DNA from: Piromyces finnis finn
Taxonomy: Eukaryota > Fungi > Neocallimastigomycota
Assembly: GCA_002104945.1 (NCBI GenBank)
Contig: MCFH01000046.1
Span: 124,001-188,000, forward strand
DNA length: 64,000 nucleotides
Direction of reading: 5' to 3'
The translations under genes and the position numbers were made by a program. Under the pieces are notes generated by a model. The model saw only the letters and a program-made list of their open reading frames with translations, ran no database searches and had not been told where the DNA came from. Of the stretch, positions 18,436-50,880 are shown piece by piece (within the stretch, counting starts at the first letter, position 1; every line of letters begins with the position of its first letter).

Positions 18436-21225
18436 TTATAGATTGGTATCTGAAAAATTAGAACTAAGAGATGTAGTTATATTATCACTTGATAAAATAA
18501 TATCATTTGAAGGAACTTGATTATATATTAGATTATTATTATCAGAGGAATAATCAATGTTAACTATACAACCTGGATAAAGTTTTCCTTTAATCTTTAA
18601 ATAACTAAGACGAGTAACAATATGCTTTTCTAAGTATCTTCTTATTGGTCTAGCACCATACGCTGGATCATAGGCTTCACTTAATATAAAGTCTTGTGCT
18701 CCTTCAGTAATATTGATTGTCATTTTTAGTAATCCTTGATTAGCAATACGCTTTTCAATATTCTTTATTTGATTGGTAATGATTGTTCTTAATTCCTTTT
18801 TGGAGAGTGGATGGAATAGAATAATATCATCTAAACGGTTAATAAGTTCTGGTTTTAAAGTTTGACGAACTTCTTCCATAACAAGATCTCTGGTATTCTT
18901 ATCAATATCAGTTCTATTATTAATAGCAAGTGTTTGTAATGGACGGTAGCCAAGATTACTTGTCATGATAATAACAGTGTTTGAGAAATCAACAGTTCTT
19001 CCCTTTCCGTCAGTTAAGACTCCGTCGTCTAAAACTTGTAATAGAATGTTGATGACTTCTGGATGTGCCTTTTCAACTTCATCAAAAAGAACAATGGAGT
19101 ATGGTCTTCTTCTGACTGCTTCGGTAAGTTGGCCACTCTCTTCATAGCCAACATAACCTGGTGGTGCACCAATTAATCTAGAGACACTGTGCTTTTCCAT
19201 GTATTCAGTCATATCAATACGAACAATATACTTTTCATCATCAAACAATTCACAAGCTAAAGCCTTGGCTAGTTCTGTCTTACCAACACCTGTTGGACCT
19301 AAGAATAGGAAGGAACCAGCAGGTGCCTTTTCGCGAGCTAATCCAGCTCTGCTTCTTAAAATAGCTTCTGCCACTAATTCAACGGCTTCATCCTGACCAA
19401 TGATTCTGTTGTGGAGATGTTCTGCTAAGTTTAAGAAACGCTCAGCTTCACCTTGAGATAAACGTTGGACCGGAATACCTGTCCACTTGGAAACAATATC
19501 CGCTATTTCGTTTGCTCCAATGATTTCTTTTAATAATCTTTCGTTTTGTTCCTTTGGTACCTTTGGCTTTTCTCCACTTTGATTGTTATCGAAAAATTCA
19601 TTATTATTACCTATCATCTTGCCATTATTAAAATTATCATCTTCTTCTTCAATCATCTCATCAAGTTCCTTTTCTCTCTTTGCTTCTAATTCCTTCAACC
19701 GATTTTCAACTTCTGGTAAGGCATAGTACTTCAAATCAGCTGCTAAAGCTAAATCGTGTTTACGCTCTGCATCTGCAATCTTATTACGAATTTCATCAAG
19801 TTTCTTGTTCATGGTACCAATTTCATCGATACGTTTCTTTTCATTTTTGTATTGCTCCATTAAAGGTTTAAGTTTTTCATTTAATTGGCAAATTTCTTCT
19901 TCAACCTTTTGTAATCTATCTTTTGCAATCTGACTTTTCTCTCCAGATAATGCTGTTTTTTCAATTTCAAGCTGTAGTTTTTTTCTTTCTAAAATATCAA
20001 TTTGTTCTGGTTGTGATTCTAATTGAACCTTTGCGTAAGCACAGGCTTCATCAATCAAATCAATAGCTTTATCTGGTAAGAAACGATTAGTAATATAACG
20101 ATTAGAAAGATAGGCTGCTTGAACTAAGGCACTATCTAAAATTTTAACACCCGCATATGCTTCGAATTTTTCTTTTAAACCTCTTAAGATAGTAATGGTA
20201 TCTTGGACACTTGGCTCACCGACATAAACTTGTTGGAAACGACGTTCAAAAGCTGCGTCCTTTTCAACATATTCACGATATTCTGCAAGAGTAGTAGCAC
20301 CAATGCATCTAAGCTCTCCTCTAGCTAACATTGGCTTTAATAAATTTGCAGCATCCATTGATCCACTGGTTTTTCCAGCTCCGAGAACTAAATGAATTTC
20401 ATCAATAAATAAAACAATAGGTTCTTCGGAAGTAGTGACTTCATTAAGAACTGCCTTTAATCTTTTCTCAAAGTCACCACGATAGGCACTACCGGCAACC
20501 AAAGCACCCATATCCAAAGAATATAATCTACACTTCAGATTTGCTGGAATATCGTTTGCAACAATTCTTTGTGCTAATCCTTCAATAATAGCTGTTTTAC
20601 CAACACCCGGTTCACCAATTAAGCAGGGGTTGTTCTTCTTTCTACATGTTAATACACGAATAACTCTTCTGATTTCATCATCACGGCCAATAACTGGATC
20701 AAATTTACCTTGTTCTGCTAAAGCAGTCATATCAATAGCATATTTATTCAAAGCATCAAAAGTGTCTTCAGCGTTTTTACTATCAGCGGTGCTATTTCCT
20801 CTAATTTTCTTAATTTGCTCTTTAACATTATTAACGTCAATACCAGAACTTTTGAGAATAGAAGAAATTTCTGTAGATTCAATTAAAGCAATAATAAGTG
20901 AATACACAGTACAGAATTTATCTTTATTTTTGGAACTGATTTTTTGGGCATTTTGAATGATTGTGTAGGTTGCCTTACTAAAGTTGACTTCTATTGGTGG
21001 TGGATTTTGGACTGGAAGTTGAACAATTTTTCTTTTGATAGCACATTCAACTGTTAAAGAATCGCCACCGCTTTTAGTAATTGCTTTCTTTAACATACTA
21101 TCTTCATCATCTATAAGAGCTATAAACATATGCCATGGTTGAATTTCTATATGGCTATTTTCTTGAGCTAATTCTTTTGATTTTAAAATAATGTTTTCTG
21201 CCATATTAGAATACCTTGAGCTCAT
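18436..21225 (-). CDS. HSP104: Hsp104/Hsp101 (ClpB-type) AAA+ disaggregase, copy A; intronless, 929 aa
   Basis: Clp N-domain, Walker A GEPGVGKT and GPTGVGKT, Walker B LFIDEIH and LFDEVEK, pore loops AYRG and GYVG, M-domain [10 protein letters not shown], and YGARPIRR. No organellar presequence. Confidence 0.95.
18548..21199 (-). repeat. Left arm of a 2652-bp inverted repeat (partner at 48051-50702)
   Basis: The reverse complement matches 48051-50702 from AGAAAACATT to GATTATTC, and both arms are 2652 bp. I found four substitutions by eye; a full alignment is needed for the exact count. Confidence 0.92.
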
Positions 21226-22933
21226 TTAATATGTTTTATTATTTTTACTGATTATTTATTTTATAATAAATTAATGTTTTATTAATTTTATATAATAAAA
21301 AGAAGAGTTCTTTTACTTTAGTCCACATTTTAAACTAAAAAATGTTATAAAAATTAATCATTTTAAAACTAATTTTTTGGAAAATTATTTAATTATTATA
21401 ATATATTAAATAAATATATTATTAATATATTTATTTATATTAAAATTAATTTAAATTAATAAAAACTTTAGAAATATATTAAGTAAAATAATTGATTGAC
21501 TACTTTTTATATAAATACTTTATTACCACATTAATTTATAAATAAAAAATGGACTTTACATGACTAAAAATATTTATATCAAAAGTTAAAAAAATGAAAA
21601 AAGAAACATCCTTATTTTTATAATATGAACAATAATAATAATAATAGTAGTAGTAGTGGTAGTAGCAGTTGTTGTTGTTATTGTAAAAATAGTAAAAGTT
21701 GTAAAAATAATAGTAAAAATAATAAAATTTAACAAGAATTGATATACTTTGTGGAAAAAGTTATTTATATTATATATTGTTTATTACATATGAAAAATAT
21801 ATATGTATATTTTTTGGACTATTCTCTAAAATGTAAATGATATTATAAAATTTTTTCAAATGAAAAAAAAATAATAATAATAATAAACAACTAATAGTAT
21901 TAAATAAAAATCAATATCAAGTTTATAATTCTTATACAATTTATTAAATAGTATATTATAATATTTACATTTAACTAGTAAAAAATTCAATACATAAAAA
22001 GAAATAATAACAAATATTTAATAGTTTTTATTTTTTATTTTTATCATTTAAAGTGAATTCTAATAAGTTGATCGAAGTATTAATAAATTAATAAATTATA
22101 AAAGATTTATAAGATTAAAATATATTATTAAAATTAACATTAAAATAAATATAATTAGTAATGAATATAATGAAAAAGTGTATTTATAATAAATTATATG
22201 ATTAAAAAAAAAAAAAAAAAAAAAAAAGCAATTATAATAATCCAAGGTGCTTTTTTATTATTAAATTGCTGCTTTCAATAATAATTTTAATAGTTTTTAT
22301 AATTAAATTTGTTTTACGTGTTTAATAGAATTCAAATATGTAATTATTATATATGATAATAAAAGTTTTATATAGTGTGAAGGGTAGATATTTAAAATAT
22401 TAATATCATTCCATTTATATAAAATTTATATAAAAGAAAATAATGTGGAGAAAAATCATCATATTTATTGACATATAAGACAAAACAGTAATTATTATAA
22501 TTATAAAAAAGTTAATTCATAGAACTTTAATAATTATAAATTGGAAAAGTTAATTAAAAATAATTCAATTTGTTTTTATTAATTTAAAGTTCAGAAAAAA
22601 GAAATAATATGAAAAATTAAAAAAAAAAAAAAAAAAAGTAATATTAATTAATTACAATAAATTTTATTTTTTTCATATTAAAACTATTTTTGGTGAATAG
22701 TATTATTAAACTTTTCTTATTTCAATTAAAAAAATGAATTTATTTTAAAATATTATTTTTTTTTGTTTAGTCTCGTCTCATATTTGTAATAAATAAAAAA
22801 CTCAAGAATAATATATTATATATATATTTATTAACTAAGTTTACAAAATTAGAAATTACTTATTAGTATAATTACATTATTAAAACAAAATTATTTTTAT
22901 TCAGTAAAAATAATTTTTTTTTTAAAATAGAAA

Positions 22934-25900
22934 ATGAAAGTAAAAAATATAATAGCATTAGCAATCACATTAGCTTCAACAATATCAGGAGCTGTTATTA
23001 CACCATCTGGTTTAGAGATTCCAGAATCACTTATGGTATATCTAAGATGTCCAATTGGTGATAGTAAATGTAAAAATGGAAAAAGTAGTGCATGCGTTGC
23101 CCATTCTAACATTTGTCGTTATGATAATCCAAGTTCATTAGACAAATCACTTCGTAATGCTGGTTATGATATTGGAACATTAACAGCTGAAGAATATTGT
23201 AAAATCCACATTGAAGTATGTGATATGATTTATAAATATGATCCACCAGTTACTGACGATGACATATACAATTATGAAAAATATTTTACTTGTGATGAAG
23301 ATGATTATTTATGTAAATATAATCAAAATTCTAGCTGTCAAACTGTACTTAAGAAATGTCTTGAATCTTATCCAGAAGATGCCTGTCAAAAACTATCAAT
23401 AGTATGTGATAATATTGATAATGGTGTTATACCAATTTTTGATGATGAACCAGTTGTAGATGAACCAGTTGTTGATGAACCAGTTGTTGATGAACCAGTT
23501 GTAGATGAACCAGTTGTAGATGAACCAGTTGTTGATGAACCAGTTGTTGATGAACCAGTTGTAGATGAACCAGTTGTAGATGAACCAGTTGTAGATGAAC
23601 CAGTTGTAGATGAACCTGTTGTTGATGAACCTGTTGTTGATGAACCTGTTGTTGATGAACCTGTTGTTGATGAACCTGTTGTTGATGAACCTGTTGTTGA
23701 TGAACCTGTTGTTGATGAACCTGTTGTTGATGAACCAGTTGTTGATGAACCAGTTGTTGATGAACCAGTTGTTGATGAACCAGTTGTTGATGAACCTGTT
23801 GTTGATGAACCAGTTGTTGATGAACCAGTTGTAGATGAACCAGTTGTAGATGAACCAGTTGTAGATGAACCAGTTGTAGATGAACCAGTTGTTGATGAAC
23901 CAGTTGTAGATGAATCCGTTAATAATAATATTGAAATACCAAATACATCTATAAATAGTAATAACAACAAAGGGAAAATATATACCCCATCTGGTTTAGA
24001 AATACCAGATTCATTATTAGTATACTTAAATTGTCCAATTGGTGATAGTAAATGTAAAAATGGAAAAAGTAGTGCATGTATTACACATTCTAACATTTGT
24101 CGCTATGATAATCCAAGTTCATTAGACAAATCACTTCGTAATGCTGGTTATGATATTGGAACATTAACAGCTGAAGAATATTGTAAAATCCACATTGAAG
24201 TATGTGATATGATTTATAAATATGATCCACCAGTTACTGACGATGACATATACAATTATGAAAAATATTTTACTTGTGATGAAGATGATTATTTATGTAA
24301 ATATAATCAAAATTCTAGCTGTCAAACTGTACTTAAGAAATGTCTTGAATCTTATCCAGAAGATGCCTGTCAAAAACTATCAATAGTATGTGATAATATT
24401 GATAATGGTGTTATACCAATTTTTGATGATGAACCAGTTGTAGATGAACCAGTTGTTGATGAACCAGTTGTAGATGAACCTGTTGTTGATGAACCAGTTG
24501 TTGATGAACCAGTTGTTGATGAACCAGTTGTTGATGAACCAGTTGTTGATGAACCTGTTGTTGATGAACCAGTTGTAGATGAACCAGTTGTAGATGAACC
24601 AGTTGTAGATGAACCAGTTGTAGATGAACCAGTTGTAGATGAACCAGTTGTAGATGAACCAGTTGTAGATGAACCAGTTGTAGATGAACCAGTTGTTGAT
24701 GAACCAGTTGTTGATGAACCAGTTGTTGATGAACCAGTTGTTGATGAACCAGTTGTTGATGAACCTGTTGTTGATGAACCTGTTGTTGATGAACCTGTTG
24801 TTGATGAACCTGTTGTTGATGAACCTGTTGTTGATGAACCAGTTGTTGATGAACCAGTTGTTGATGAACCTGTTGTTGATGAACCTGTTGTTGATGAACC
24901 TGTTGTTGATGAACCTGTTGTTGATGAACCAGTTGTTGATGAACCTGTTGTTGATGAACCTGTTGTTGATGAACCAGTTGTTGATGAACCAGTTGTTGAT
25001 GAACCAGTTGTTGATGAACCAGTTGTAGATGAACCAGTTGTAGATGAACCAGTTGTTGATGAACCAGTTGTAGATGAATCCGTTAATAATAATATTGAAA
25101 TACCAAATACATCTATAAATAGTAATAACAACAAAGGGAAAATATATACCCCATCTGGTTTAGAAATACCAGATTCATTATTAGTATACTTAAATTGTCC
25201 AATTGGTGATAGTAAATGTAAAAATGGAAAAAGTAGTGCATGTATTACACATTCTAACATTTGTCGCTATGATAATCCAAGTTCATTAGACAAATCACTT
25301 CGTAATGCTGGTTATGATATTGGAACATTAACAGCTGAAGAATATTGTAAAATCCACATTGAAGTATGTGATATGATTTATAAATATGATCCACCAGTTA
25401 CTGACGATGACATATACAATTATGAAAAATATTTTACTTGTGATGAAGATGACTACATGTGTAAATTTAATCAAAACTCTAGTTGCCAAATAGTTCTTAA
25501 AAATTGTTGGAGTTCTTATTCTGATGATGATTGTAAAAAATTATCTACTGTGTGTGACAGCATTGATTCTGGTATAATTCCAAATTTTAAAGATATCGAA
25601 GTTAATGTTTCCAATGTTTCACAAGAAGTTACTTCAGAAGATACCAACAATGAAGAAACTGTAGAAAGTATTAAAACAGAAGATGGTTATGTTATTCCAG
25701 ATTCTCTTTTAACCTATTTAAACTGTCCAATTGGTAATAGCATTTGTAAGAACAGTAAAGGCAGTGCATGTACAAGTAGCTACAGTATTTGTGGTAGTAA
25801 CCCAGAAACTTTATCTCAAACATTTGAAAGTTTCAGAATTGAAACTGGAAATTTAACACCAGAGGAATACTGTAAAATTCACTATAGTGTCTGTAATATG

Positions 25901-26182
25901 ATTATTGATTATAATCCACCATTAACTGATGATTATATATATGATCTTGATAGATATTTAACATGTAATGATGGTGATTCTCTTTGTCAATTTGGCCAAG
26001 AATCTAGTTGTAATACAGTTCTTAGCTTATGTTGGGGTAATTATTCAGATAGTGATTGTAATAAATTAGCAAGTACTTGTGAAAAGATTTATTCAAAGAA
26101 AACTACTACAAAAATTAATGCATCAACAAAGAACAATAAAGTTCATACCATAAAAAAAACAATTGTTAAAAGAAGAAGTTAA
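22934..26182 (+). CDS. Secreted cysteine-rich protein CRP1 (1082 aa): signal peptide, four 12-Cys domains, two (DEPVV)n linkers, basic Thr/Lys tail; family not recognised
   Basis: Intronless ORF with signal peptide [20 protein letters not shown]. The domain TPSG..IP.SL..YL.CPIGD..C...SC..VL..C...C.KL...C occurs four times. The tail is [28 protein letters not shown]. Confidence 0.9.
23444..23908 (+). repeat. Coding minisatellite, 31 x 15 bp (GATGAACCWGTTGTW), encoding (DEPVV)31
   Basis: 465 bp divided by 15; the only variation is synonymous (CCA/CCT, GTA/GTT). Confidence 0.93.
24428..25072 (+). repeat. Coding minisatellite, 43 x 15 bp, encoding (DEPVV)43
   Basis: 645 bp divided by 15; same three synonymous unit variants as the first array. 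Confidence 0.93.
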
Positions 26183-27250: not shown

Positions 27251-27766
27251 ATGTTATCAAATTTAGTTTCTCTTGCTATTTCCTTTGCTTCTGTAGTTTC
27301 TGCAACTGTTTTAACAAGTAATGGTAATAAAATACCAAATTCATTGGTATCATATCTTGATTGTCCTATTGGAGATACACTTTGTAAGAATAATATGAAA
27401 AGTAAATGTCTTACTTCAGAAACATATAATATTTGTAAAAATGGTAATCCACTTATTTTGGATGAATTACTTGCTCAAAATAATGTTGACATTGAAAATT
27501 ATTCTCCTGTTGAGTTTTGTAAGATTCAAACACAAGTTTGTAATATGATTGAAGATTATAATCCTCCATTAACTAGAGATTATATTTTCGATGTTGAAAA
27601 TTATTTAACATGTGATGACGATGACGAAATGTGTAAATACAGTAAAAATTCCACTTGCAGACTAGTAGTAAAAATGTGTTGGGGTAATTATCCAAAAACA
27701 GCTTGTAAAAAGTTATCAAAAACTTGCGATGAAATTGGCTACGAAGAACCAAACGAAACAAATTAA
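27251..27766 (+). CDS. Secreted cysteine-rich protein CRP2 (171 aa), single 12-Cys domain
   Basis: Signal peptide MLSNLVSLAISFASVVSA. Domain reads IPNSLVSYLDCPIGDTLC...YNPPLT...YLTCDDDDEMC...CWGNYP..ACKKL..TC with 12 Cys. Confidence 0.88.
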   Translation: MLSNLVSLAISFASVVSATVLTSNGNKIPNSLVSYLDCPIGDTLCKNNMKSKCLTSETYNICKNGNPLILDELLAQNNVDIENYSPVEFCKIQTQVCNMIEDYNPPLTRDYIFDVENYLTCDDDDEMCKYSKNSTCRLVVKMCWGNYPKTACKKLSKTCDEIGYEEPNETN

Positions 27767-28481: not shown

Positions 28482-29939
28482 CTAATAGTAATTGGGACGC
28501 TTTTTTAAATAAGTAGATGATTGTGTAAATGATATTTTGGATGAAGATGTTGTTTTTGATGAAAATAATTTAGAATAATATTTATTGGCTGTGAATGATC
28601 TTCTAGTTGTCGTTAATTTTTTAGTTATTGCTTGCCATCTAGTTATTGTTGGTTTTTTAGTTATTGTTTGTAATTTAGTTGTTAACTTTTTAGTTTTTAT
28701 TTGCCATTTAGATGTATTTAATGTTGTTTTTTTCGTAAAAGTATTAATTGATTCTTTTTCTGAAGTACTATTAAGCATACCACAAAATTCCTTAATAACA
28801 AAACAAAATTCAAGATAATTTAAATCTCCAATATCATAGTTAGATAGTAAATTAATATATTTAGTTTGATCTCGATTTTCACAATATAGAGAATATTCTT
28901 GAAGGCAACTTTTTGCTGCGGTTTCACCATTTTCTATATCAAAGTATTTTAAAAGAGGTTGTGGGACTTCAGCCCCTGATGGTGTATATAATAAATTATA
29001 TGATTGATATAACTGATCAATTTCATTACATTTTGATAATAACTTGTTACATGCATCATTTGGATATTTACTTTCACACATACTATAAGCCATTCTACAA
29101 CTAGAGCGCTTACCATAATAACAAGATTGAGTATTTATTTCACATTCATAAATTTCTAAATCATATATATATCTACTATTAAATGAGTTATTATATTCCA
29201 TTATATATTCACACGCTTTTTTATGTTTATCACAATAATCATTAGGTTCTAAATAATCAATTTCATCATTGTTATTTATATATTCTATTAATTCACTTTG
29301 TCTTTCTGGATTACAAATAGTATAATGATCGAGGCATTTTTTTGTTTCTTCCCTTTTACAAGATATGTCTCCAAGTAAACATCCAAAATATTGCGTAAGT
29401 GGTTTTGGCAATCTAGTATTGTCAGGTGTAAATATTGCTACCTCATCATTATATTGTTTATATATATTATCACATGTTTCTGATAAATTTCTACAATCTT
29501 TTACCGGATATTTACCCCAGCATTTATCAAGTACTTTCTTACATCCATTATAATTACCGTATTGACATATCGAATCATTATATCCACAACTTAAATATTG
29601 ATCCAAATCATAAACATCATTATCACTTATTTCTGGAACATAAATATTAATATATTGACATGATTCATTGATCAATTTACAGAAATCAGATGGAGGAAAA
29701 TTACCTATATCAAAATCCTTAGATATTTTTTCAATCTGAATATCTGGGCTTTCACAATAGCTAATATATTCATAGTGACAAGAACGCCCGTTTCCATTAA
29801 TACATACAGTATTACCGGTTTGGCATGAAAAATAATGCAAAAGAGATTTTGGAACCTCTTTCCCCGATGGTAATATGATATTTGCTAATGAAGTCCTATT
29901 AAGCAAAATCACATATGGAATTATATTTTTTATCTTCAT
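28482..29939 (-). CDS. Secreted cysteine-rich protein CRP3 (485 aa): two full domains, a degenerate half-domain, and a basic Thr/Lys/Ser-rich tail
   Basis: Signal-like N-terminus MKIKNIIPYVILLNRTSLA. Domains start LPSGKEVPKSLL, TPDNTRLPKPL and TPSGAEVPQPLL. The tail reads KKTTLNTSKWQIKTKKLTTKLQTITKKPTITRWQAITKK. Confidence 0.85.
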   Translation of the reverse strand: MKIKNIIPYVILLNRTSLANIILPSGKEVPKSLLHYFSCQTGNTVCINGNGRSCHYEYISYCESPDIQIEKISKDFDIGNFPPSDFCKLINESCQYINIYVPEISDNDVYDLDQYLSCGYNDSICQYGNYNGCKKVLDKCWGKYPVKDCRNLSETCDNIYKQYNDEVAIFTPDNTRLPKPLTQYFGCLLGDISCKREETKKCLDHYTICNPERQSELIEYINNNDEIDYLEPNDYCDKHKKACEYIMEYNNSFNSRYIYDLEIYECEINTQSCYYGKRSSCRMAYSMCESKYPNDACNKLLSKCNEIDQLYQSYNLLYTPSGAEVPQPLLKYFDIENGETAAKSCLQEYSLYCENRDQTKYINLLSNYDIGDLNYLEFCFVIKEFCGMLNSTSEKESINTFTKKTTLNTSKWQIKTKKLTTKLQTITKKPTITRWQAITKKLTTTRRSFTANKYYSKLFSSKTTSSSKISFTQSSTYLKKRPNYY

Positions 29940-30100
29940 TTTTTCTACTAATATATCACTAAAGAAATAGAAAAAAAAAATATAAAATATATATATTATT
30001 TTTTATTTAATGTAGTATAAATTTATTAATTATTGGCATTTATAAACTTAATTTATTATATATATTTTTTTTTTAAATGAGCGAAAATTAAATTTAAATT

Positions 30101-30600: not shown

Positions 30601-31140
30601 TTAGAGAATTTCTTTGACAGCTTCCTTAATAACATCTATTTCAGCAAGTTTATTGCATACATTTCCTAATTTTTGACAAGCTTTATTTGGATAATTTCCC
30701 CAACATCTTTTAAGTACAGATCCACAACTAACATTCTTACCATGGATACACATAGTATCAGAATCATCACAATCTAAGTATTTCTCGATATTATAAATAT
30801 ATTCGATTGTTAAATGAGGATCATAATTTTCGATCATTCCACAAACTTCTGTATGTATTTTACAAAATTTTGTTGGAGTTAAATCACCAATGTCGATATC
30901 TTTATCATAAAAAATATCATATAGTGAATCTGGGTCATTAGAGTTACAAATTTTAATAATATCAGATTCATTACATGATTCGACTTTTTCTTTTTTACAA
31001 ACAATATCACCAATTTGACAATCTAAATAAGTTAACAGTGAAGAAGGAATAATAATACCAGATGGTGTTTTGACTGTTAATAAAGCTGAAACAGCAGTGG
31101 CACAGCTAATAGCAATAGTAGCTAAATTTAAAACTCTCAT
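30601..31140 (-). CDS. Secreted cysteine-rich protein CRP4 (179 aa), single 12-Cys domain
   Basis: Signal peptide MRVLNLATIAISCATAVSA. Domain reads TPSGIIIPSSLLTYLDCQIGDIVC...CWGNYPNKACQKLGNVC. It shares the CX8C spacing at C3-C4 with CRP2. Confidence 0.88.
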   Translation of the reverse strand: MRVLNLATIAISCATAVSALLTVKTPSGIIIPSSLLTYLDCQIGDIVCKKEKVESCNESDIIKICNSNDPDSLYDIFYDKDIDIGDLTPTKFCKIHTEVCGMIENYDPHLTIEYIYNIEKYLDCDDSDTMCIHGKNVSCGSVLKRCWGNYPNKACQKLGNVCNKLAEIDVIKEAVKEIL

Positions 31141-40307: not shown

Positions 40308-40940
40308 ATGGAATCAAATATTTCAAAATTTCCATCAAATTATAATCAAATATTATTTGAAACAATTAATTTATGTGGGAATGAAGAAGAAAATGAATTT
40401 AGAAGGATAAACTTTATTAGCCATTACAATAAATTAAAATCAAATCAAAACAATACGAATTCAAAATTATTAAAAAAGTCATATACAATTAAAAAAGCTC
40501 AAAGTAAAAACAGTAAAGATATTGTTTCCATAAACACAGTTGTAGATATGTTAAATAGTAGTATTTGTAAAGCTAATAAAGAAAAAAATAATATACCACT
40601 TAATATACCTCCAAAAACAAAATTTGATATAAATAATAATGATAAATGCATTAATTTTGATTTTATAGATAAAATACAGGAATATAAAAACGAAACAAAG
40701 GACATTAATAAATCTATAACTAAATTTTCAAAAATTGATAATGAAGATTTAAATGATGATATTCAAGATGATATTAGACAGTATTTAAATGGCAACAATA
40801 ATAAAATAAATGAAAAAGATACAGGTATAAAAAATAAAAAAAATATTAAGAAAAAGAAAAAGAAAATGATTAAAATGGAGCTTCCAACTAATGGCTTCGA
40901 TATTGAATTTCCAATTATTAGAAATCCAAATTCTTTTGTA

Positions 40941-40999
<59 letters not shown>

Positions 41000-41126
41000 A
41001 AGTTATACCATATTAACTAAAAGAAAGCAAAAGCAAAAACTCATTGAAAATGTTGAATTGTTCAATAAAAATTTAATGAATGATAATGATACAAATAATT
41101 TTTTAAATATCTTAGAAATACCAAAA

Positions 41127-41157
<31 letters not shown>

Positions 41158-42724
41158 ATAATAATAAAAATGAATTGCCCATTATTAGTAAAGTTATTCT
41201 TAAAGAAGCTAAAAAAATAATTAATAATGATAATAATATCGATATAACTAATGATAATGAATTGACAGATGCAAATGGTACATCAAATCCTTCTAATTCT
41301 AATAATAGGATTTTACGTAGTCAGTCAAATTCTAATAACAATAATATAAGTTTTAATCAATTCAACAAGAATATAGACAAAAATAGAAATAATAATTTCA
41401 GTAATGATAATGAAAATAATAGACGTGATAGAGGTAATATTAATGATAATAATGAAAATAATAATGCTCCAAAACTAAAAGTAACAAATAAAGAAATAAG
41501 AAAAATACGTCGTGCTTTACGTAGAGCTACTGTAGATTGTTCAGAACGTGGTTTATTTCAAGCTTCTAAATGGTAAATATTTGGAAAATTTAGATTAATT
41601 AATTTCGAATGATTAAAAAATTATAGAATATAATTCATTATTAAACTTTTTAAAAGAAAAAAGATGTTAACAATAAATAATAATATAATTTAAATTTGTA
41701 CAGGGCATCAGAACAATTAAATAGTATAACAAAAGCATCCGAAAGTCTAAATCAATATAGAGTATATAAAAGTCAAAAGAAAAGAAAAAGAAATAAAAAT
41801 AAGGGCCAATCAATGGATGAAAATAAAATTGGTATCGATATAATGGATGAGGATGAGTCTAGTAGTGATGATGAATGCGATATTTATTATTATTCAGATA
41901 GTGATAATGAAGATCAAATTATAAGCAATGACATTAATATGAATTCTATATTTAATAGTACCCCATATAATAAAGTCTTAAACTCTTCATCAACAACAAT
42001 GAAAAATGATGTTAAGTCAAAAAAATCAAGTAAACAAAAATATCCACATAATCCAAAGATGACTTATAAAGAGTATGATAAATTTTTGTTTGCAAGAACT
42101 TTATTTGATATTCGCGAATTTGATCGTGCATCATATACTTTAAATTCATTAACGCATCCGAAATGTATATTTTTAAGACTATATTCAAAATTTATGGTAA
42201 TATCTAAAGAAAAATATTTTTAACCAAACAATATTATAAAATGAAATTATATATATTCAGATATATTTATATAACTAAATATTAATAAAAATGTATAACA
42301 TAAATAATAATTGTTTTAAAAAAAAACTATATTAAAGGCTGGTGAAAAAAGAAAAGATGAAGAAATTGTCGATATTGTTGGATTAAATGAGAATACTTAT
42401 TATATGAATAAGGATATAGTTGAAATAGAAACAGATTTAATAGAGGGCATAAAAAATAACCCAGATGATGGCTTTTTATTTTATTTGTAAGCTATAAAGT
42501 TTATAAATAAACATGATAAATGAAATTTAAACATTTATTACACATCTTAAATTCGTTTTAATTAATTTAATAAAAATATCATTTAGGTATGGAGTAATAT
42601 GTGTTAAAAAGAATCAAAAGAAAAAGGCAATACAACTTTTAACAAGATCGGTAAAATTATACCCATATAACTGGAGTGCATGGCTAGAATTAGCATCTTG
42701 TTTAATCACTCAAGAATTAGTAAT

Positions 42725-42823
<99 letters not shown>

Positions 42824-44365
42824 CATCATCATAATTATTCAATACAAAAGTATTTTTTAATAAATTATTAAAATCATATAATTAATTTTTGTAATTAGAT
42901 TACCAGTGTATTACCAGAAATCGAAGATAATTTAATGTCTAGATTCTTTATGACTCATTTAGCATTGGAGTATCAAAACAATAATGAAAACTTCGAAAAT
43001 TATATTAAACCTTGTATAGAAATATTTGATGATAGTAATTATATTCGTTCTCAACTGGCATTATCAAATTATCACACCAGAGGTTAATAAAATTTTAAAT
43101 AAATATATTTTTTAAATATTCATTTTAATTTAATATATTTATAAAAAAGCATTGCCATTATATTATATTATTATATTATAACACATTATATTATATGAAT
43201 AATGACAAATTAATATGAATAATAAAATATTTTTTATTTTTAATAATAATAGATTTTGAAGAATCTGAACAATATTTTGATAAGATTATCAAAAAGGATC
43301 CATATACCCTAGAAAACATGGATATTTTCTCACATGTGTTATATGTAACAGAAAAAGCAACCAAATTAAGTTATTTAGCTCATAATTGTTGTATGATTGA
43401 TAAATATCGTCAAGAAACGTGTTGTATTATTGGTAATTATTATTCTTTACGTGGTGAACATGAAAAAGCAGTATTGTATTTCCAACGAGCATTAAAACTT
43501 AATAAAAATTATCTTTCAGCATGGACATTAATGGGTCATGAATATATTGAACTAAAAAATACTCAGGCAGCAATAGAGGCTTATCGAAAAGCCATTGGTA
43601 TGTATCTATAGTTTTTTAAAATAAATATGTTATTTTTTCCATCGCTATTATATTATAAAGAAAGTATATTCATTAATAATTATAAATATTTTTTAACCTT
43701 TTTATTTAAAGATTTAAGTCAAAGAGATTATAGAGCATGGTATGGTTTAGGTCAAATTTATGAAGTATTAAGAATGCCTTATTATTCACTTTATTATTAT
43801 CAACAAGCGGCATCATTGAGGTAAATACAATATCAATAATAACTTGAAGGAATTAATATTTATATATACAATTAATTATTATATATATAATAGGCCATAC
43901 GATTCTAGAATGTGGGTTGCATTAGCCCAATGCTATGACTATATGGATCATAAAATAGAAGCAGTTAAATGCTATAAGCGTGCTTTAATAGGAGGTGACT
44001 CAGGACCAATTGTTCTTATTAAATTAGCCAATCTTTATGCAAAACTTGGAAATAACGATACAGCAGCATATTATTATCGCTTTAGTTTGTTGGAATATAA
44101 AAAATTAAATAACGTAAGTTTTCCTAGCATTTTTTAAATTTATTGAAAAGTATTTTTAATCATAAGTTAATAATATATAATATTTATTAAATAAAATTGA
44201 AAAAAAAAAAAAATAGATTGAAGATCCAAATTATCAAGAAGGATGTATATTTATGGCGAACTATTATAAACGTAAAAAGAATTATCAAAATGCAGAAAAA
44301 TATTTACAAGATGTAAGAACCAAAAATAATTTGCATTTTTATTACATTATAATACAACAATCTAC

Positions 44366-44399
<34 letters not shown>

Positions 44400-45043: not shown

Positions 45044-46364
45044 TTAAAATATTTTTCGTAATATTCTTCTGTAAAGACGAATATTTCTAATAGTAGATCT
45101 TTTTACAGGAAATTTCTTTGGTAAAATGTGTCTTATTCTTTTTGGTATATGATCTAGTATAAACTTTTCTAATATACTACCAATAGGAAAGGTATTTTTT
45201 TTTATATATTTTTTGTATTCATTATTAGAACGTTGTTGAATTTTCCTTAATACATGACTTCTTTTACGTTGTTTTTTATATATCAATTGATCAATTGATA
45301 ATTTTTTTTGCTTTCTTCTTTTTCTTGATGATAATTGTTGTTTTTCTTCTGCCTGTTTTAGATTATATTTTTTTTCGTTTTTTGATTCCGACAGTTGTGA
45401 TTTTTTAGTTTGTAACTGTTTTTTAATTTCTGTAAAAAAGTTAAGCATAGTAAACTTATTAAATTTAGTATTTGGAATATGAAAAATCCCTTTAAAATAT
45501 TTCAATGTTTTTGAAATAAATCCTATCTTATCTTTTGTAATATATGGTATCATTAGTACTACTATGAAATTTATTGTTAATATTAGTTTAATTATTAATA
45601 TAATTTTATAATAAATCATTTTTTTTTTATAAATTACCTTGTTTATTTTTTTTAATAGCATAATCGCCAATAACAGTATCTTTAGTAGCTATATATTCTA
45701 GATGACTTTTTGGACAAATATTTAGATCAGTCTTATATTCTTTATTTTTTTTATTAATTATACTACCAATAGGTATATATAAATATGATATTGGAAAAGA
45801 TTCACTGATACTATTTTCAATCTTTGAACAAATATCCATCAACTTTTGGCAATCATTTATTGATTGAAAACTCCAACACTTATTAAGAACATAATGACAA
45901 CTTGACACTTGACTAGAAATACACATAGTATCACCAAACTCACATTTAAAATATCTGTCGTAGTCATAAATGTAATCATCAGTTAACGGTGGATCATAAT
46001 TCATAATCATATCACATATTTCAATAATTAATTGACAATAGTTTTCTAATGACAAATTATCAATATATTTTACTTCTTTATTATCACTATATTGGCAAAC
46101 CTCTGAATTTTTTATACATAACTTTATATTTTCATTTTTACAATTTATATTTCCAATTGGGCAAGACAAATATTTTAATAGTGAATCTGGGATAACTTTT
46201 CCAGACTTTGTTTTTATTTTTAATAAATTATATAATGGTCTTATACTACTCTCATCTCTATCAACCGAGTCTAAAATTTTACCATCACTTGACACTTGAT
46301 AAGCTCTTGATACTTCAAAAGCTAAATTAACTATAAATAGAATTACTATATAATACATATTCAT
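45044..46364 (-). CDS. Secreted cysteine-rich protein CRP5: one 12-Cys domain plus a probable second exon encoding a highly basic tail (predicted 414 aa)
   Basis: Signal peptide MNMYYIVILFIVNLAFEVSRA and domain IKTKSGKVIPDSLLKYLSCPIGNINC...CQKLMDIC. A donor AAG|GTAATT at 45637 and acceptor CATAG at 45562 define a 76-nt phase-1 intron that joins the ORF in frame to 45044-45561. The unspliced alternative is a 245-aa protein ending at 45627. Confidence 0.75.
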
Positions 46365-46864
46365 TATTAACTTTTTTTATTCTTTACATAGATATACTTA
46401 TTAATAGATTATTATAAAATTTTATTTATTTTTTTTTTTTGTTTTGTTTTATTAAATGATTATAATATTTATTGTGTTGTATTCTTATGTTTTGAAAAAT
46501 TTCGCGTTCATAATATAATAGTGGTGTTAAATAATGTATTATACATATTTATAAAAAGATTTTTTTTATTATTATGTATGTAATAATTAAAACCAATATT
46601 TAAATTGTTTTTGTAGTATCATTTTAATATTACTCAAGAACATATTAATAATCCAGAAATTAGTACCAAACTTTAATTTTAAATTACCAAATAAGTTTGC
46701 TAATTTTTAACAATTAAAAAATGAATCTTATTGGATAAAATTTTTTAATTTACATTTTATTTTTTCACTTAATTAAAATATAACTTAAATAGAATTAAGT
46801 TTTAATTACAAAACAAAATAATTTTTATTAGTAATAATTTATTTTCAGTCCTTTCTCCAAGAGA

Positions 46865-46985
<121 letters not shown>

Positions 46986-47295
46986 ATATTAAAACACTAT
47001 AATATAAATTAATAAAAAAATTATTTTATTAATTGGGAATATTCAAAATTTCTTATAATATAATAAAATTCTTATTTATAATTTTGCTTTTGAAATGAAA
47101 TGCTATTATTTTCCTAAAATTATTTTTATTATAAGTAATTTCATTGCTACCTTTATTTCATTCTAGAAAATCTAATATTAATTATTTTTTTTTCTCTAAT
47201 TTAGTTTTTATATTCTATTTATTATATTAATAATGTATAAAAGTTCTGTATACCTAAATAAAATAAATGTATTATGGAAATAAGTATATTATATT

Positions 47296-47308
47296 TTCTC
47301 GAACTTTT
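47296..47308. promoter_or_regulatory. Possible imperfect heat-shock element TTCtcGAActTTT upstream of Hsp104 copy B
   Basis: Alternating nGAAn/nTTCn units about 720 bp upstream of the ATG, with a second partial TTCtaGAA at 47161. Chance occurrence is plausible in DNA this AT-rich. Confidence 0.25.
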
Positions 47309-48024
47309 TTAAAAAATAAAAGAATTTTTTAAAGATAAAAATAAAATGTAATTTAATTTTATATTATTAATCTCCTGCTATTATATTTTAAATAAAAAAA
47401 TCCAAAAAGAAAAAAGAGAAATTGTAAGAAATACTAGAATATTTTAAAATTTTTATTTATTTCAAAAAAAAAGATTTATTAGTAATTATTATTGATATAC
47501 ATTTTACATTAAACTACATTAAATTTTGTAGTACTATTCTTTTATCAATATAATTATTCTACTAAATTCTATATTATTCTATATAATTCTACTACATTAA
47601 TTTTAGTAAATTTCAGTAGTTATAAACTTTATTAATTAATATTTCTAATTAATAATATAGAATAAATTAATTTCCATCAAATGGAAAAAAAGAATATAAT
47701 TTGGAGATTTGACATTTAAAAAAAAAAGTATAAATATAGCAAAAAAATATTCAAAAATTTTTTTACTTTATCGAATATTAAATATAATATTAAAATATAA
47801 TATTAATTATACCATAATAAAAACTATTAATATTTTAGCATTATAAAAAATAATAAAATTATTTTATAAATTATATATTATATATATAAAAAATCAAAAA
47901 ATCAAAATAAATTAAAGAACATTCATTAATATAAATTATAAATTAAATAAAAAAATAATTATTAATATCTATTTATCAAAAAAATTTTACATTTATTATA
48001 TTAAGTATTTTTATAACTTTTAAA

Positions 48025-50880
48025 ATGAGCGAAAATTTTACAGAAAAGGTAGAAAACATTATTTTAAAATCAAAAGAATTAGCTCAAGAAAATAGCCATA
48101 TAGAAATTCAACCATGGCATATGTTTATAGCTCTTATAGATGATGAAGATAGTATGTTAAAGAAAGCAATTACTAAAAGCGGTGGCGATTCTTTAACAGT
48201 TGAACGTGCTATCAAAAGAAAAATTGTTCAACTTCCAGTCCAAAATCCACCACCAACAGAAGTCAACTTTAGTAAGGCAACCTACACAATCATTCAAAAT
48301 GCCCAAAAAATCAGTTCCAAAAATAAAGATAAATTCTGTACTGTGTATTCACTTATTATTGCTTTAATTGAATCTACAGAAATTTCTTCTATTCTCAAAA
48401 GTTCTGGTATTGACGTTAATAATGTTAAAGAGCAAATTAAGAAAATTAGAGGAAATAGCACCGCTGATAGTAAAAACGCTGAAGACACTTTTGATGCTTT
48501 GAATAAATATGCTATTGATATGACTGCTTTAGCAGAACAAGGTAAATTTGATCCAGTTATTGGCCGTGATGATGAAATCAGAAGAGTTATTCGTGTATTA
48601 ACATGTAGAAAGAAGAACAACCCCTGCTTAATTGGTGAACCGGGTGTTGGTAAAACAGCTATTATTGAAGGATTAGCACAAAGAATTGTTGCAAACGATA
48701 TTCCAGCAAATCTGAAGTGTAGATTATATTCTTTGGATATGGGTGCTTTGGTTGCCGGTAGTGCCTATCGTGGTGACTTTGAGAAAAGATTAAAGGCAGT
48801 TCTTAATGAAGTCACTACTTCCGAAGAACCTATTGTTTTATTTATTGATGAAATTCATTTAGTTCTCGGAGCTGGAAAAACCAGTGGATCAATGGATGCT
48901 GCAAATTTATTAAAGCCAATGTTAGCTAGAGGAGAGCTTAGATGCATTGGTGCTACTACTCTTGCAGAATATCGTGAATATGTTGAAAAGGACGCAGCTT
49001 TTGAACGTCGTTTCCAACAAGTTTATGTCGGTGAGCCAAGTGTCCAAGATACCATTACTATCTTAAGAGGTTTAAAAGAAAAATTCGAAGCATATGCGGG
49101 TGTTAAAATTTTAGATAGTGCCTTAGTTCAAGCAGCCTATCTTTCTAATCGTTATATTACTAATCGTTTCTTACCAGATAAAGCTATTGATTTGATTGAT
49201 GAAGCCTGTGCTTACGCAAAGGTTCAATTAGAATCACAACCAGAACAAATTGATATTTTAGAAAGAAAAAAACTACAGCTTGAAATTGAAAAAACAGCAT
49301 TATCTGGAGAGAAAAGTCAGATTGCAAAAGATAGATTACAAAAGGTTGAAGAAGAAATTTGCCAATTAAATGAAAAACTTAAACCTTTAATGGAGCAATA
49401 CAAAAATGAAAAGAAACGTATCGATGAAATTGGTACCATGAACAAGAAACTTGATGAAATTCGTAATAAGATTGCAGATGCAGAGCGTAAACACGATTTA
49501 GCTTTAGCAGCTGATTTGAAGTACTATGCCTTACCAGAAGTTGAAAATCGGTTGAAGGAATTAGAAGCAAAGAGAGAAAAGGAACTTGATGAGATGATTG
49601 AAGAAGAAGATGATAATTTTAATAATGGCAAGATGATAGGTAATAATAATGAATTTTTCGATAACAATCAAAGTGGAGAAAAGCCAAAGGTACCAAAGGA
49701 ACAAAACGAAAGATTATTAAAAGAAATCATTGGAGCAAACGAAATAGCGGATATTGTTTCCAAGTGGACAGGTATTCCGGTCCAACGTTTATCTCAAGGT
49801 GAAGCTGAGCGTTTCTTAAACTTAGCAGAACATCTCCACAACAGAATCATTGGTCAGGATGAAGCCGTTGAATTAGTGGCAGAAGCTATTTTAAGAAGCA
49901 GAGCTGGATTAGCTCGCGAAAAGGCACCTGCTGGTTCCTTCCTATTCTTAGGTCCAACAGGTGTTGGTAAGACAGAACTAGCCAAGGCTTTAGCTTGTGA
50001 ATTGTTTGATGATGAAAAGTATATTGTTCGTATTGATATGACTGAATACATGGAAAAGCACAGTGTCTCTAGATTAATTGGTGCACCACCAGGTTATGTT
50101 GGCTATGAAGAAAGTGGCCAACTTACCGAAGCAGTCAGAAGAAGACCATACTCCATTGTTCTTTTTGATGAAGTTGAAAAGGCACATCCAGAAGTCATCA
50201 ACATTCTATTACAAGTTTTAGACGACGGAGTCTTAACTGACGGAAAGGGAAGAACTGTTGATTTCTCAAACACTGTTATTATCATGACAAGTAATCTTGG
50301 CTACCGTCCATTACAAACACTTGCTATTAATAATAGAACTGATATTGATAAGAATACCAGAGATCTTGTTATGGAAGAAGTTCGTCAAACTTTAAAACCA
50401 GAACTTATTAACCGTTTAGATGATATTATTCTATTCCATCCACTCTCCAAAAAGGAATTAAGAACAATCATTACCAATCAAATAAAGAATATTGAAAAGC
50501 GTATTGCTAATCAAGGATTACTAAAAATGACAATCAACATTACTGAAGGAGCACAAGACTTTATATTAAGTGAAGCCTATGATCCAGCGTATGGTGCTAG
50601 ACCAATAAGAAGATACTTAGAAAAGCATATTGTTACTCGTCTTAGTTATTTAAAGATTAAAGGAAAACTTTATCCAGGTTGTATAGTTAACATTGATTAT
50701 TCTCAAGAAAAATTAAAGCCAATTAATGATCAAATATTATTAAATAGTTCTTCGTCACCAATTTCTTCTCCTTCTCTTAGTGGTTCATACAATCCAAGAA
50801 AAAGATATTTTGAAGATGATTCATTAATATTTACAGTTCAACCACCAGAGATTGATAATGATGACAAGATGGAATTATAA
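48025..50880 (+). CDS. HSP104: Hsp104/Hsp101 AAA+ disaggregase, copy B; intronless, 951 aa, with an acidic C-terminal tail
   Basis: Same motifs as copy A. It has a canonical-looking N-terminus ([13 protein letters not shown]) and the tail ...[29 protein letters not shown]. Confidence 0.95.
48051..50702 (+). repeat. Right arm of the 2652-bp inverted repeat (partner at 18548-21199)
   Basis: Differences seen versus the left arm are at 48205 (R/C), 48257 (T/I), 50112 (synonymous) and 50538 (synonymous). Confidence 0.92.

What the first reader, a model, noticed from the sequence alone, without database searches (positions are those of the whole stretch)
18436..50880. Mirror-image module: each inverted Hsp104 copy is head-to-head with a cysteine-rich gene at nearly the same distance
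On the left, Hsp104A (-, ATG 21225) and CRP1 (+, ATG 22934) are 1708 bp apart. On the right, CRP5 (-, ATG 46364) and Hsp104B (+, ATG 48025) are 1660 bp apart. The CRP5 domain most resembles CRP1 domain 4 (IKTKSGKVIPDSLLKYLSCPIGN versus [23 protein letters not shown]; [14 protein letters not shown] versus [14 protein letters not shown]), and both proteins end in basic tails. This suggests an old inverted duplication of a two-gene [Hsp104 / CRP] unit sharing a divergent promoter. It may couple a protein disaggregase to a secreted disulfide-rich protein under stress. The coupling is hypothesis only.
Basis: partly seen in the sequence, partly recalled or inferred. Interest (0 to 1): 0.75.

Follow-up and report, generated by a model that had tools for sequence, protein, structure and literature searches.

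The report
Inverted Hsp104 pair bracketing secreted-protein genes
In the gut fungus Piromyces finnis two mirror-image Hsp104 chaperone genes, kept alike by gene conversion, bracket a small fungus-specific family of secreted cysteine-rich genes. The "mirror module" with a cysteine-rich neighbour on each side is real as a layout, but nothing shows it is a duplicated or co-regulated two-gene unit.

Summary
The layout is as described. Hsp104A (-) and CRP1 (+) are head-to-head 1708 bp apart. CRP5 (-) and Hsp104B (+) are head-to-head 1660 bp apart.

The only duplicated DNA is a 2652-nt core inside the Hsp104 coding sequence, with 4 mismatches and sharp ends. The two spacers share no similarity.

Comparative data:
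- Anaeromyces robustus has the same inverted Hsp104 pair with the same outer flanks.
- There Hsp104A'-CRP1'-CRP2' is conserved with a 2511-bp spacer.
- It has no CRP between ANAPC8 and Hsp104B'.
- The CRP5-Hsp104B pair recurs only in Piromyces-like fungi, with a 1334-bp spacer in one metagenomic species.

Spacer lengths are therefore not conserved. Domain trees do not place CRP5 with CRP1-D4; AU tests give p = 0.002 to 0.06 against it when orthologues are included.

A 13-mer core-promoter element lies upstream of every other Hsp104 locus fetched. It is missing from P. finnis Hsp104A, which also has odd termini.

The CRP domain is a Pfam-less, 12-cysteine, all-helical module. Relatives fuse it to CBM1, CBM18 or dockerin, which points to an extracellular role, in a different compartment from cytosolic Hsp104.

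Best reading: an old inverted Hsp104 duplication under concerted evolution flanks a locally expanding CRP cluster. The equal spacing is coincidence. The scan noted the Hsp104 gene-conversion signature separately (s1-171822).

The parts
18436..21225 (-). Hsp104A, a ClpB/Hsp104-type disaggregase of 929 aa. Its first ~9 codons and last ~36 codons are aberrant. It lacks the family-wide C-terminal tail.
   Evidence: ORF and translation. Pfam Clp_N, AAA, AAA_lid_9, AAA_2, ClpB_D2-small. Termini compared with 11 relatives.
18548..21199 (-). Gene-conversion tract, arm A: 2652 nt with 4 mismatches to arm B and sharp ends inside the CDS.
   Evidence: Flanks outside the tract are 39-45% identical, which is random.
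21226..22933 (.). Left spacer, 1708 bp, 12.5% GC. It has no similarity to the right spacer. It has no Hsp104 core-promoter 13-mer and no HSE-like site.
22934..26182 (+). CRP1: signal-peptide-like N-terminus, four 12-Cys CRP domains, two DEPVV arrays and a short T/K-rich basic tail.
   Evidence: Orthologues in A. robustus (P0126) and Piromyces sp. E2.
27251..27766 (+). CRP2, single-domain.
   Evidence: Orthologues in A. robustus and E2.
28482..29939 (-). CRP3: two full domains, a half domain and a basic T/K-rich tail.
   Evidence: Orthologues in E2 and a metagenomic species.
30601..31140 (-). CRP4, single-domain.
   Evidence: Orthologues P0002 and P0003.
35013..36765 (-). N-terminal exons of TAF5 (LisH, TFIID_NTD2). 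The gene continues towards lower coordinates.
   Evidence: Pfam. Synteny TAF5-CRP4-CRP3 in relatives.
40308..44135 (+). Unnamed ORF (40308-41576) followed by ANAPC8/Cdc23 exons (41696 to about 44135).
   Evidence: Pfam ANAPC8. tblastx to the A. robustus ANAPC8 gene ends near 44135.
45044..45562 (-). CRP5 exon 2: a K/R-rich tail of 172 aa found only in the CRP5 subfamily.
   Evidence: Matches the last 172 aa of P0124. The tail is shared with P0134, P0149 and P0139.
45639..46364 (-). CRP5 exon 1: signal-peptide-like start, one CRP domain and a degenerate second-domain remnant.
46365..48024 (.). Right spacer, 1660 bp. Its Hsp104B-proximal ~450 bp is conserved in orthologous B promoters.
47728..47736 (+). 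TATA-like element GTATAAATA, 297 nt upstream of the Hsp104B ATG. It is identical in the metagenomic B promoter; A. robustus B' has a GTATAAATA at -335 that the four-way alignment does not place in register, and the E2 copy has only a one-base variant.
47801..47813 (+). 13-mer TATTAATTATACC. It is present once, on the sense strand, 178-290 nt upstream of every other Hsp104 locus fetched. It is absent upstream of Hsp104A.
47912..47929 (+). Two overlapping HSE-like trimers, one mismatch each.
   Evidence: 3 sites in this spacer against 0.28 expected. None in the left spacer.
48025..50880 (+). Hsp104B, 951 aa, with the canonical N-terminus and C-terminal tail of anaerobic-fungal Hsp104.
48051..50702 (+). 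Gene-conversion tract, arm B.

Best explanation
The genome is Piromyces finnis. An ancient inverted, heads-in duplication of the cytosolic disaggregase gene Hsp104 brackets 26.8 kb. The duplication predates the Piromyces/Anaeromyces split. The two coding cores are kept nearly identical by inter-paralogue gene conversion. Everything outside the 2652-nt tract has diverged beyond recognition.

The bracketed segment holds TAF5, ANAPC8 and all full-length members of a Neocallimastigomycota-specific family of secreted 12-cysteine all-helical proteins (CRP1-5). That family has grown and shrunk by local duplication and loss. CRP1 and CRP5 happen to be the outermost genes, so each faces an Hsp104 copy.

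The pairs are not copies of one two-gene unit that can be demonstrated. They do not share a promoter. The similar spacer lengths are coincidental.

Shown:
- the layout;
- the conversion tract;
- the age of the Hsp104 pair;
- the absence of CRP5 in A. robustus;
- the lack of spacer homology;
- the loss of the conserved Hsp104 promoter element from P. finnis Hsp104A.

Inferred:
- gene conversion as the mechanism;
- an extracellular role for the CRPs;
- no functional link to Hsp104.
For: Species. One search names the CRP5 gene model BCR36DRAFT_415090 of Piromyces finnis.

Conversion tract. The tract is 2652 nt with 4 mismatches, and its flanks are random.

Age of the pair. On one A. robustus contig, Hsp104A' (-) and Hsp104B' (+) lie 31.6 kb apart with the same outer neighbours. 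They are 95.6% identical to each other in protein, against 87-90% to the P. finnis copies. This is concerted evolution.

Left and right pairs in A. robustus.
- The left pair is conserved there with a 2511-bp spacer.
- ANAPC8 is followed directly by Hsp104B', with no CRP. tblastn finds nothing at 1e-3 and a six-frame profile search gives only E > 1.

Right pair elsewhere. It is conserved in a metagenomic Piromyces-like species at 1334 bp. A CRP5 orthologue lies after ANAPC8 in Piromyces sp. E2.

Spacers. Left against right scores z = -0.5. Orthologous B promoters are easily detected: z = 15, and E = 6e-29 and 2e-11.

Promoter element. The 13-mer is upstream of all other Hsp104 loci fetched but not upstream of Hsp104A.

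Family size and location. All 10 strong CRP-domain hits in the 56-Mb genome lie in this window. Only 33 representatives were found among 1.84 billion proteins.

Extracellular role. Relatives are fused to CBM1, Chitin_bind_1 and CBM10.

Context. Gene conversion between paralogues is common elsewhere in this genome according to earlier scan notes.
Against: - The CRP5 lineage looks old. Nesting it inside the Piromyces CRP1 domains is disfavoured or rejected (p-AU 0.002-0.06). Its absence from A. robustus may therefore be a loss, which leaves an ancestral mirror possible.
- Both pairings are conserved in at least one other species.
- All CRPs left of the locus centre are on the + strand and all those right of it are on the - strand. 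This is what a decayed palindrome would give.
- No expression data were available to exclude co-regulation.
- The Piromyces sp. E2 scaffold has a gap exactly where Hsp104B' should be, so that species is uninformative.
Confidence: 0.6

Rival explanations
1. Decayed ancient palindrome. The original inverted duplication covered a multi-gene segment: Hsp104 plus a CRP1-like gene, and perhaps on to a CRP2-like gene and HSP70. Redundant housekeeping copies were lost from one arm. A. robustus lost its right-arm CRPs. Only the Hsp104 (and HSP70) coding sequences stayed similar, through gene conversion.
For: - Gene orientations are mirror-symmetric. The left arm is Hsp104(-) CRP(+) CRP(+) [HSP70(-) in A. 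robustus]. The right arm is [HSP70(+)] CRP(-) CRP(-) ... CRP(-) Hsp104(+).
- A. robustus carries a nested head-to-head HSP70 pair, 100% identical over 1944 nt, inside the Hsp104 pair.
- The CRP5 lineage appears older than the genus split.
- Every Hsp104 locus fetched except P. finnis Hsp104A keeps the same core-promoter element, so the duplicated unit reached at least about 300 bp upstream.
Against: - No residual similarity exists outside the Hsp104 CDS.
- The domain tree is a polytomy. It pairs neither CRP5 with CRP1 nor CRP2 with CRP3 or CRP4.
- A. robustus would need at least two independent CRP losses.
- TAF5, the unnamed ORF and ANAPC8 break the symmetry.
- The right arm has three CRPs and the left arm has two.
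Confidence: 0.25
2. Functional stress module. Each Hsp104 shares regulatory DNA with its CRP neighbour, so secreted CRPs are co-induced with the disaggregase under heat or other stress.
For: - Head-to-head orientation of both pairs.
- Each pairing is conserved in at least one other species.
- The locus also carries HSP70 genes in relatives.
- At least three Hsp104-annotated genes of A. robustus are strongly heat-induced, with log2FC of about 3-6 (PMC10512342 supplement).
Against: - The spacers are 1.3-2.5 kb, longer than classical bidirectional promoters.
- The conserved Hsp104 promoter block and the HSE-like sites lie within about 550 nt of the Hsp104B ATG, more than 1.1 kb from CRP5.
- The left spacer lacks both features.
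- A. robustus Hsp104B' has no CRP partner.
- Two further Hsp104 loci in Piromyces-like fungi have no CRP neighbour.
- Hsp104 is cytosolic and the CRPs look secreted and disulfide-bonded.
- Gene ids next to the induced Hsp104 genes were not found in the heat-shock lists. The ids could not be mapped to genes, so this is weak evidence.
Confidence: 0.1
3. Assembly artefact. The second Hsp104 copy or its orientation is a mis-assembly.
For: Near-identical 2.65-kb repeats are hard to assemble. The Piromyces sp. E2 assembly breaks at these genes.
Against: - The two copies have different unique termini and flanks.
- The same inverted pair, with syntenic flanks, exists in an independent A. robustus assembly and partly in metagenome contigs.
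Confidence: 0.02

Closest known systems
Inverted hsp70 gene pairs of Diptera (Drosophila hsp70Aa/Ab type) evolving in concert by gene conversion. The Drosophila case is recalled from my own knowledge. The topic appears by title in PMC3071340 and PMC3924832; I did not open either paper.
   Same: Two heat-shock genes in inverted orientation. Their coding regions are homogenised within a species while the flanks diverge. The pair is conserved across related taxa.
   Different: Here the gene is Hsp104. The arms are about 27-32 kb apart rather than a few kb. The arms enclose unrelated genes, including a whole secreted-protein family. One copy (P. finnis A) has lost the ancestral promoter element and tail.
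Yeast Hsp104 / bacterial ClpB disaggregases
   Same: Clp_N, two AAA+ modules, a lid and a D2-small domain. Identity to other fungal Hsp104 proteins is 54-58%.
   Different: Anaerobic fungi carry 2-3 cytosolic paralogues. Their tail ends in ...DKMEL rather than the yeast acidic DDLD end; the yeast end is recalled from memory.
Bidirectional (divergent) promoter gene pairs
   Same: Head-to-head orientation.
   Different: The spacers are 1.3-2.5 kb and of variable length. There is no shared sequence between the two pairs. The partner is missing in A. robustus. Co-expression is untested.
Frizzled-type cysteine-rich domain. UniRef names the CRP5 model an 'FZ domain-containing protein'.
   Same: A cysteine-rich, mostly helical extracellular module of similar size.
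   Different: The CRP domain has 12 invariant cysteines. It gives no Pfam Fz hit. No Frizzled structure appears among the fold-search matches.

Membership tests
Hsp104/ClpB class-1 AAA+ disaggregase | Clp_N domain, two AAA+ nucleotide-binding domains with Walker A motifs, AAA lid, ClpB D2-small domain | tested here: met
   Pfam hits for both copies: AAA_2 at 6e-69, AAA_lid_9 at 3e-31, AAA at 1e-26, ClpB_D2-small at 5e-19, Clp_N at 2e-12. GEPGVGKT and GPTGVGKT are visible in the translations.
Hsp104/ClpB class-1 AAA+ disaggregase | Conserved C-terminal tail of the anaerobic-fungal cytosolic Hsp104 clade (...[12 protein letters not shown]...DKMEL) | tested here: not met
   Hsp104B and all 9 other Neocallimastigomycota copies aligned have it. 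Hsp104A does not. This applies to copy A only.
Inverted duplicates under gene conversion (concerted evolution) | Near-identity confined to a tract with sharp boundaries, with old divergence outside it | tested here: met
   2652 nt with 4 mismatches. Flanks are 39-45% identical.
Inverted duplicates under gene conversion (concerted evolution) | Positional orthologues of both copies in another species, with paralogues more alike within a species than orthologues between species | tested here: met
   A. robustus A'/B' have syntenic flanks. Identity is 95.6% within the species against 87-90% between species.
Duplicated two-gene [Hsp104/CRP] unit | Homology of the spacer and of the CRP partners at a depth matching the Hsp104 duplication | tested here: not met
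   The spacers are unrelated. CRP5 is not sister to CRP1-D4 or to CRP1 D1-3.
Duplicated two-gene [Hsp104/CRP] unit | Both pairs present wherever the inverted Hsp104 pair is present | tested here: not met
   A. robustus has the pair but no CRP or CRP remnant beside Hsp104B'.
Bidirectional promoter pair | Head-to-head genes separated by a short shared promoter, classically under 1 kb | tested here: not met
   The spacers are 1708, 1660, 2511 and 1334 bp.
Bidirectional promoter pair | Correlated expression of the two genes | not testable with these tools
   Heat-shock tables exist for A. robustus and N. californiae (PMC10512342). Their gene ids could not be mapped to the CRP genes.
Frizzled cysteine-rich domain | Match to the Fz profile or fold | tested here: not met
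   No Pfam hit at E <= 0.1. The best Foldseek PDB match has E = 0.42 and the listed matches include no Frizzled entry. The best VIA-align Z is 7.9, on a generic helical hairpin.

The most novel reading that the evidence does not exclude
The locus is the worn-down remnant of a large palindrome that forms a heat-shock island in anaerobic gut fungi. It would have nested inverted chaperone pairs, Hsp104 outside and Hsp70 inside. The secreted CRP genes in mirrored orientation would be original cargo and possibly stress-regulated.
Probability: 0.15. Interest if true: 0.55.

Novelty: new member of a known kind. Interest (0 to 1): 0.3.

Why it matters
As a mechanism this is ordinary: inverted heat-shock gene duplicates homogenised by gene conversion.

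It is useful in three ways:
- It warns annotators that P. finnis Hsp104A is a mosaic. Its core is repeatedly overwritten from copy B, while its promoter and termini have drifted.
- It defines a compact locus conserved between Piromyces and Anaeromyces, and partly recovered in two further Piromyces-like fungi, that holds Hsp104 and, in some species, Hsp70 pairs.
- It delimits an undescribed extracellular 12-cysteine helical domain family. The family is restricted to anaerobic gut fungi and is sometimes fused to cellulose-binding, chitin-binding or dockerin modules. It may matter for their cell-wall or cellulosome biology.

Tried and rejected
- Spacers. Local alignment and blastn of the two spacers gave nothing above shuffles or above other intergenic DNA.
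- Heat-shock elements. Neither spacer has a perfect canonical HSE trimer.
- Pfam. No hit explains the CRP domain. The Extensin_1 and ASFV_J13L hits on CRP1 are to the DEPVV arrays.
- ESM Atlas. No usable lead.
- Fold search. The AF2 model (pLDDT 87) gave only generic helical matches.
- The search for related loci. The 6-row alignment returned only contigs under 2 kb, with no context.
- HSP70 cluster look-up, meant to reach the A. robustus interior: single-member cluster. The region was partly reached through CRP2' instead. Record positions 274,465-279,278 were not seen.
- Ancestral Hsp104 tail. No remnant was found downstream of Hsp104A.
- Heat-shock supplement of PMC10512342. Gene ids numerically next to the induced Hsp104 genes were absent. 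The ids could not be tied to genes, so this is inconclusive.
- Literature. No paper was found on Hsp104 organisation or on this cysteine-rich family in anaerobic fungi.
- Spliced CRP5 model. It was checked exon by exon against P0124.

Full report
**What the window is**

The window has about 20% GC. It encodes proteins whose public identical copies are named Piromyces finnis; CRP5 is BCR36DRAFT_415090. The window is contig C174:124001-188000 of a 56.46-Mb assembly in 232 contigs.

**The observation**

| Gene | Coordinates | Strand | Length |
|---|---|---|---|
| Hsp104A | 18436-21225 | - | 929 aa |
| Hsp104B | 48025-50880 | + | 951 aa |
| CRP1 | 22934-26182 | + | 1082 aa |
| CRP5 | starts at 46364 | - | 414 aa (spliced model) |

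- Both Hsp104 genes have the full ClpB/Hsp104 domain set.
- The head-to-head spacers are 1708 and 1660 bp, as reported.
- The public CRP5 model of 414 aa matches exon 1 (45639-46364, 242 aa) and exon 2 (45044-45562, 172 aa) separately. A 76-nt GT..AG intron lies between them.

**What is actually duplicated**

- The inverted repeat found by the repeat tool is a 2652-nt tract. It runs 18548-21199 on arm A and 48051-50702 on arm B, with only 4 mismatches.
- It begins 26 nt after the ATG and ends about 110 nt (A) or 180 nt (B) before the stop.
- Outside it, ungapped identity is 39-45%, which is random for this composition.
- The two spacers, oriented as mirror images, score 98. Shuffles score 104-107, and comparisons with other intergenic DNA score 60-111.
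- As a positive control, orthologous Hsp104B promoters are readily detected:

| Comparison | Result |
|---|---|
| P. finnis B vs a metagenomic Piromyces-like species | z = 15; 442 nt at 67%; E = 6e-29 |
| P. finnis B vs A. robustus B' | E = 2e-11, collinear |

**The CRP family**

- The domain is about 145 aa with 12 invariant cysteines.
- It has no Pfam match.
- An AlphaFold model has pLDDT 87 and is all-helical. It has no convincing match in the PDB.
- In P. finnis all 10 strong domain matches lie in this window. They form five genes, all between the two Hsp104 copies. Nine weak matches to the last third of the domain lie elsewhere.
- A profile search of 1.84 billion representative proteins found only 33 proteins. 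The named ones are from Piromyces sp. E2 and Pecoramyces, and P0126 coincides with the 588-aa CRP1' gene on the A. robustus contig. One is an unrelated short-repeat hit in a wasp.
- Some relatives end in CBM1, Chitin_bind_1 or CBM10 dockerin modules.
- With the hydrophobic N-termini, this points to secreted, wall- or cellulosome-associated proteins. That step is an inference.

**Comparative layout**

| Species | Order of genes |
|---|---|
| P. finnis | Hsp104A(-) CRP1(+) CRP2(+) CRP3(-) CRP4(-) TAF5(-) ORF(+) ANAPC8(+) CRP5(-) Hsp104B(+) |
| Anaeromyces robustus, contig MCFG01000013 | Hsp104A'(-) CRP1'(+) CRP2'(+) HSP70(-) HSP70(+) TAF5(-) ... ANAPC8(+) Hsp104B'(+) |
| Piromyces sp. E2, scaffold KZ150919 | Hsp104 fragment(-) at the scaffold start, an unrelated 248-aa secreted-protein gene, an extra CRP (P0128), CRP1', CRP2', adh_short, CRP3', CRP4', TAF5, ANAPC8, then the CRP5 orthologue P0134 |
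| Metagenomic Piromyces-like fungus | ANAPC8, CRP5 orthologue P0149, then a full Hsp104 head-to-head |

Details for A. robustus:
- The two Hsp104 copies are 31.6 kb apart, with the same genes outside the pair as in P. finnis.
- The left spacer is 2511 bp.
- Between ANAPC8 and Hsp104B' there are 1903 bp with no CRP. tblastn finds nothing at 1e-3, and a six-frame profile search gives only E > 1, as in control DNA.

Details for the other species:
- P0134 (E2) has the same unique basic tail as CRP5. A scaffold gap lies where Hsp104B' would be.
- In the metagenomic fungus the CRP5-Hsp104 spacer is 1334 bp.
- Two further Hsp104 loci of Piromyces-like fungi, next to a 7tm_3 receptor gene and next to an ankyrin gene, have no CRP within 7-8 kb.

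**Concerted evolution**

- P. finnis A and B are 99.8% identical in the protein core.
- A. robustus A' and B' are 95.6% identical in protein and 94.8% in DNA.
- Orthologues between the two species are 87-90% identical.
- Positional orthology of both copies, together with this within-species similarity, is the signature of gene conversion between old paralogues.
- Earlier scan notes report the same process elsewhere in this genome. I did not test those notes.

**Promoters**

- A 13-mer, TATTAATTATACC, occurs exactly once on the sense strand, 178-290 nt upstream of the ATG of every Hsp104 locus fetched.
  - These loci are P. finnis B, A. robustus A' and B', three E2 loci and three metagenomic loci.
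  - Upstream of P. finnis Hsp104A it is absent, even allowing two mismatches.
- A TATA-like element precedes it in the B promoters.
- HSE-like trimers with one mismatch occur in the B spacers of both species, 3 each against 0.28 expected. None occurs in the A spacers.
- P. finnis Hsp104A also has a unique N-terminus and lacks the tail shared by all other anaerobic-fungal copies.
- The left spacer of P. finnis is therefore not a homologue of an Hsp104 promoter at all.

**Domain phylogeny**

- CRP5 is 44, 46, 49 and 47% identical to CRP1 domains 1-4.
- In trees of 43 and 31 domains the orthologue groups are well supported. The deep nodes form a polytomy, and CRP5-type domains sit on long branches.
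- AU tests:

| Grouping tested | p-AU |
|---|---|
| CRP5 + CRP1-D4, P. finnis only | 0.37 |
| CRP5 + Piromyces D4 orthologues | 0.057 |
| The same plus A. robustus D3 | 0.064 |
| CRP5 and its E2 orthologue + Piromyces D4 | 0.002 |
| CRP5 inside Piromyces CRP1 D1-3 | 0.020 |

- So the D4 affinity is not supported, and a recent origin of CRP5 from CRP1 is disfavoured.
- The CRP5 lineage also evolves fast: about 44% identity between the P. finnis and E2 orthologues, against 67-82% for CRP1 and CRP2.

**Interpretation**

The most economical account is an old inverted Hsp104 duplication whose coding cores are homogenised. It flanks a segment in which a lineage-specific secreted family has expanded and contracted.

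- With 5 CRPs among 8 bracketed genes, both ends being outward-pointing CRPs has roughly a 9% chance.
- The spacer lengths differ between species.
- A decayed larger palindrome remains possible. Gene orientations are mirror-symmetric, and A. robustus holds a nested, 100%-identical head-to-head HSP70 pair. No sequence or tree evidence supports it.
- Functional coupling is untested. At least three Hsp104-annotated genes of A. robustus are heat-induced (PMC10512342 supplement). I could not map the CRP genes in that table.
- The compartment mismatch, cytosolic disaggregase against secreted disulfide proteins, argues against a direct chaperone-client link. That follows from established knowledge of Hsp104/ClpB.

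Noticed in passing
L043:12297-17650 (Anaeromyces robustus MCFG01000013, between CRP2' and TAF5): Two HSP70 genes lie head-to-head and are 100% identical over the whole 1944-nt CDS. Their proximal promoters are also identical. The pair is nested inside the Hsp104 pair. P. finnis has no HSP70 on this contig; its closest copies are on C173, C211 and C178.
   Followed up: partly
window 47801-47813 and the upstream regions of all Hsp104 loci in L021-L024, L029-L037, L039-L042: An exact 13-mer, TATTAATTATACC, lies 178-290 nt upstream of all ten Hsp104 genes examined. P. finnis Hsp104A is the one exception. It is a candidate core-promoter or 5'-UTR element of anaerobic-fungal Hsp104 genes.
   Followed up: partly
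window 18436-18547 and 21200-21225: P. finnis Hsp104A has a unique N-terminus and a short tail that lacks the clade-wide ...DKMEL end. It may be a decaying or re-purposed copy whose core is repeatedly overwritten from copy B.
   Followed up: partly
P0142, P0143, P0153, P0150 (relatives from metagenomes and Piromyces sp. E2): CRP-domain proteins are fused to CBM1, chitin-binding type 1 (CBM18) or CBM10 dockerin modules.
   Followed up: yes
window 22994-25585; L037:14045-16299; P0126 residues 20-359: CRP1 domains 1-3 group by species rather than by position. This indicates intragenic homogenisation or independent domain duplication in each species.
   Followed up: partly
G000 contigs C152, C101, C171, C172, C178, C151: Nine weak matches (E from 5e-7 to 4e-3) to the last third of the CRP domain lie elsewhere in the genome, some with in-frame stops. 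They are possibly a distant half-domain family.
   Followed up: no
L037:4053-4799 (Piromyces sp. E2): An unrelated 248-aa secreted-looking protein gene, with a hydrophobic C-terminus, lies between the Hsp104 fragment and the CRP genes. It has no counterpart in the P. finnis window.
   Followed up: partly
PMC10512342 supplement, N. californiae table: Two Hsp104-annotated genes have ids five apart (660540, 660545) and almost identical heat-shock fold changes. This hints at a similar near-identical Hsp104 pair in Neocallimastix.
   Followed up: no
P0124 (public record of CRP5): UniRef names it 'FZ domain-containing protein'. Neither the Pfam Fz profile nor the fold search supports a Frizzled-type domain.
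   Followed up: yes
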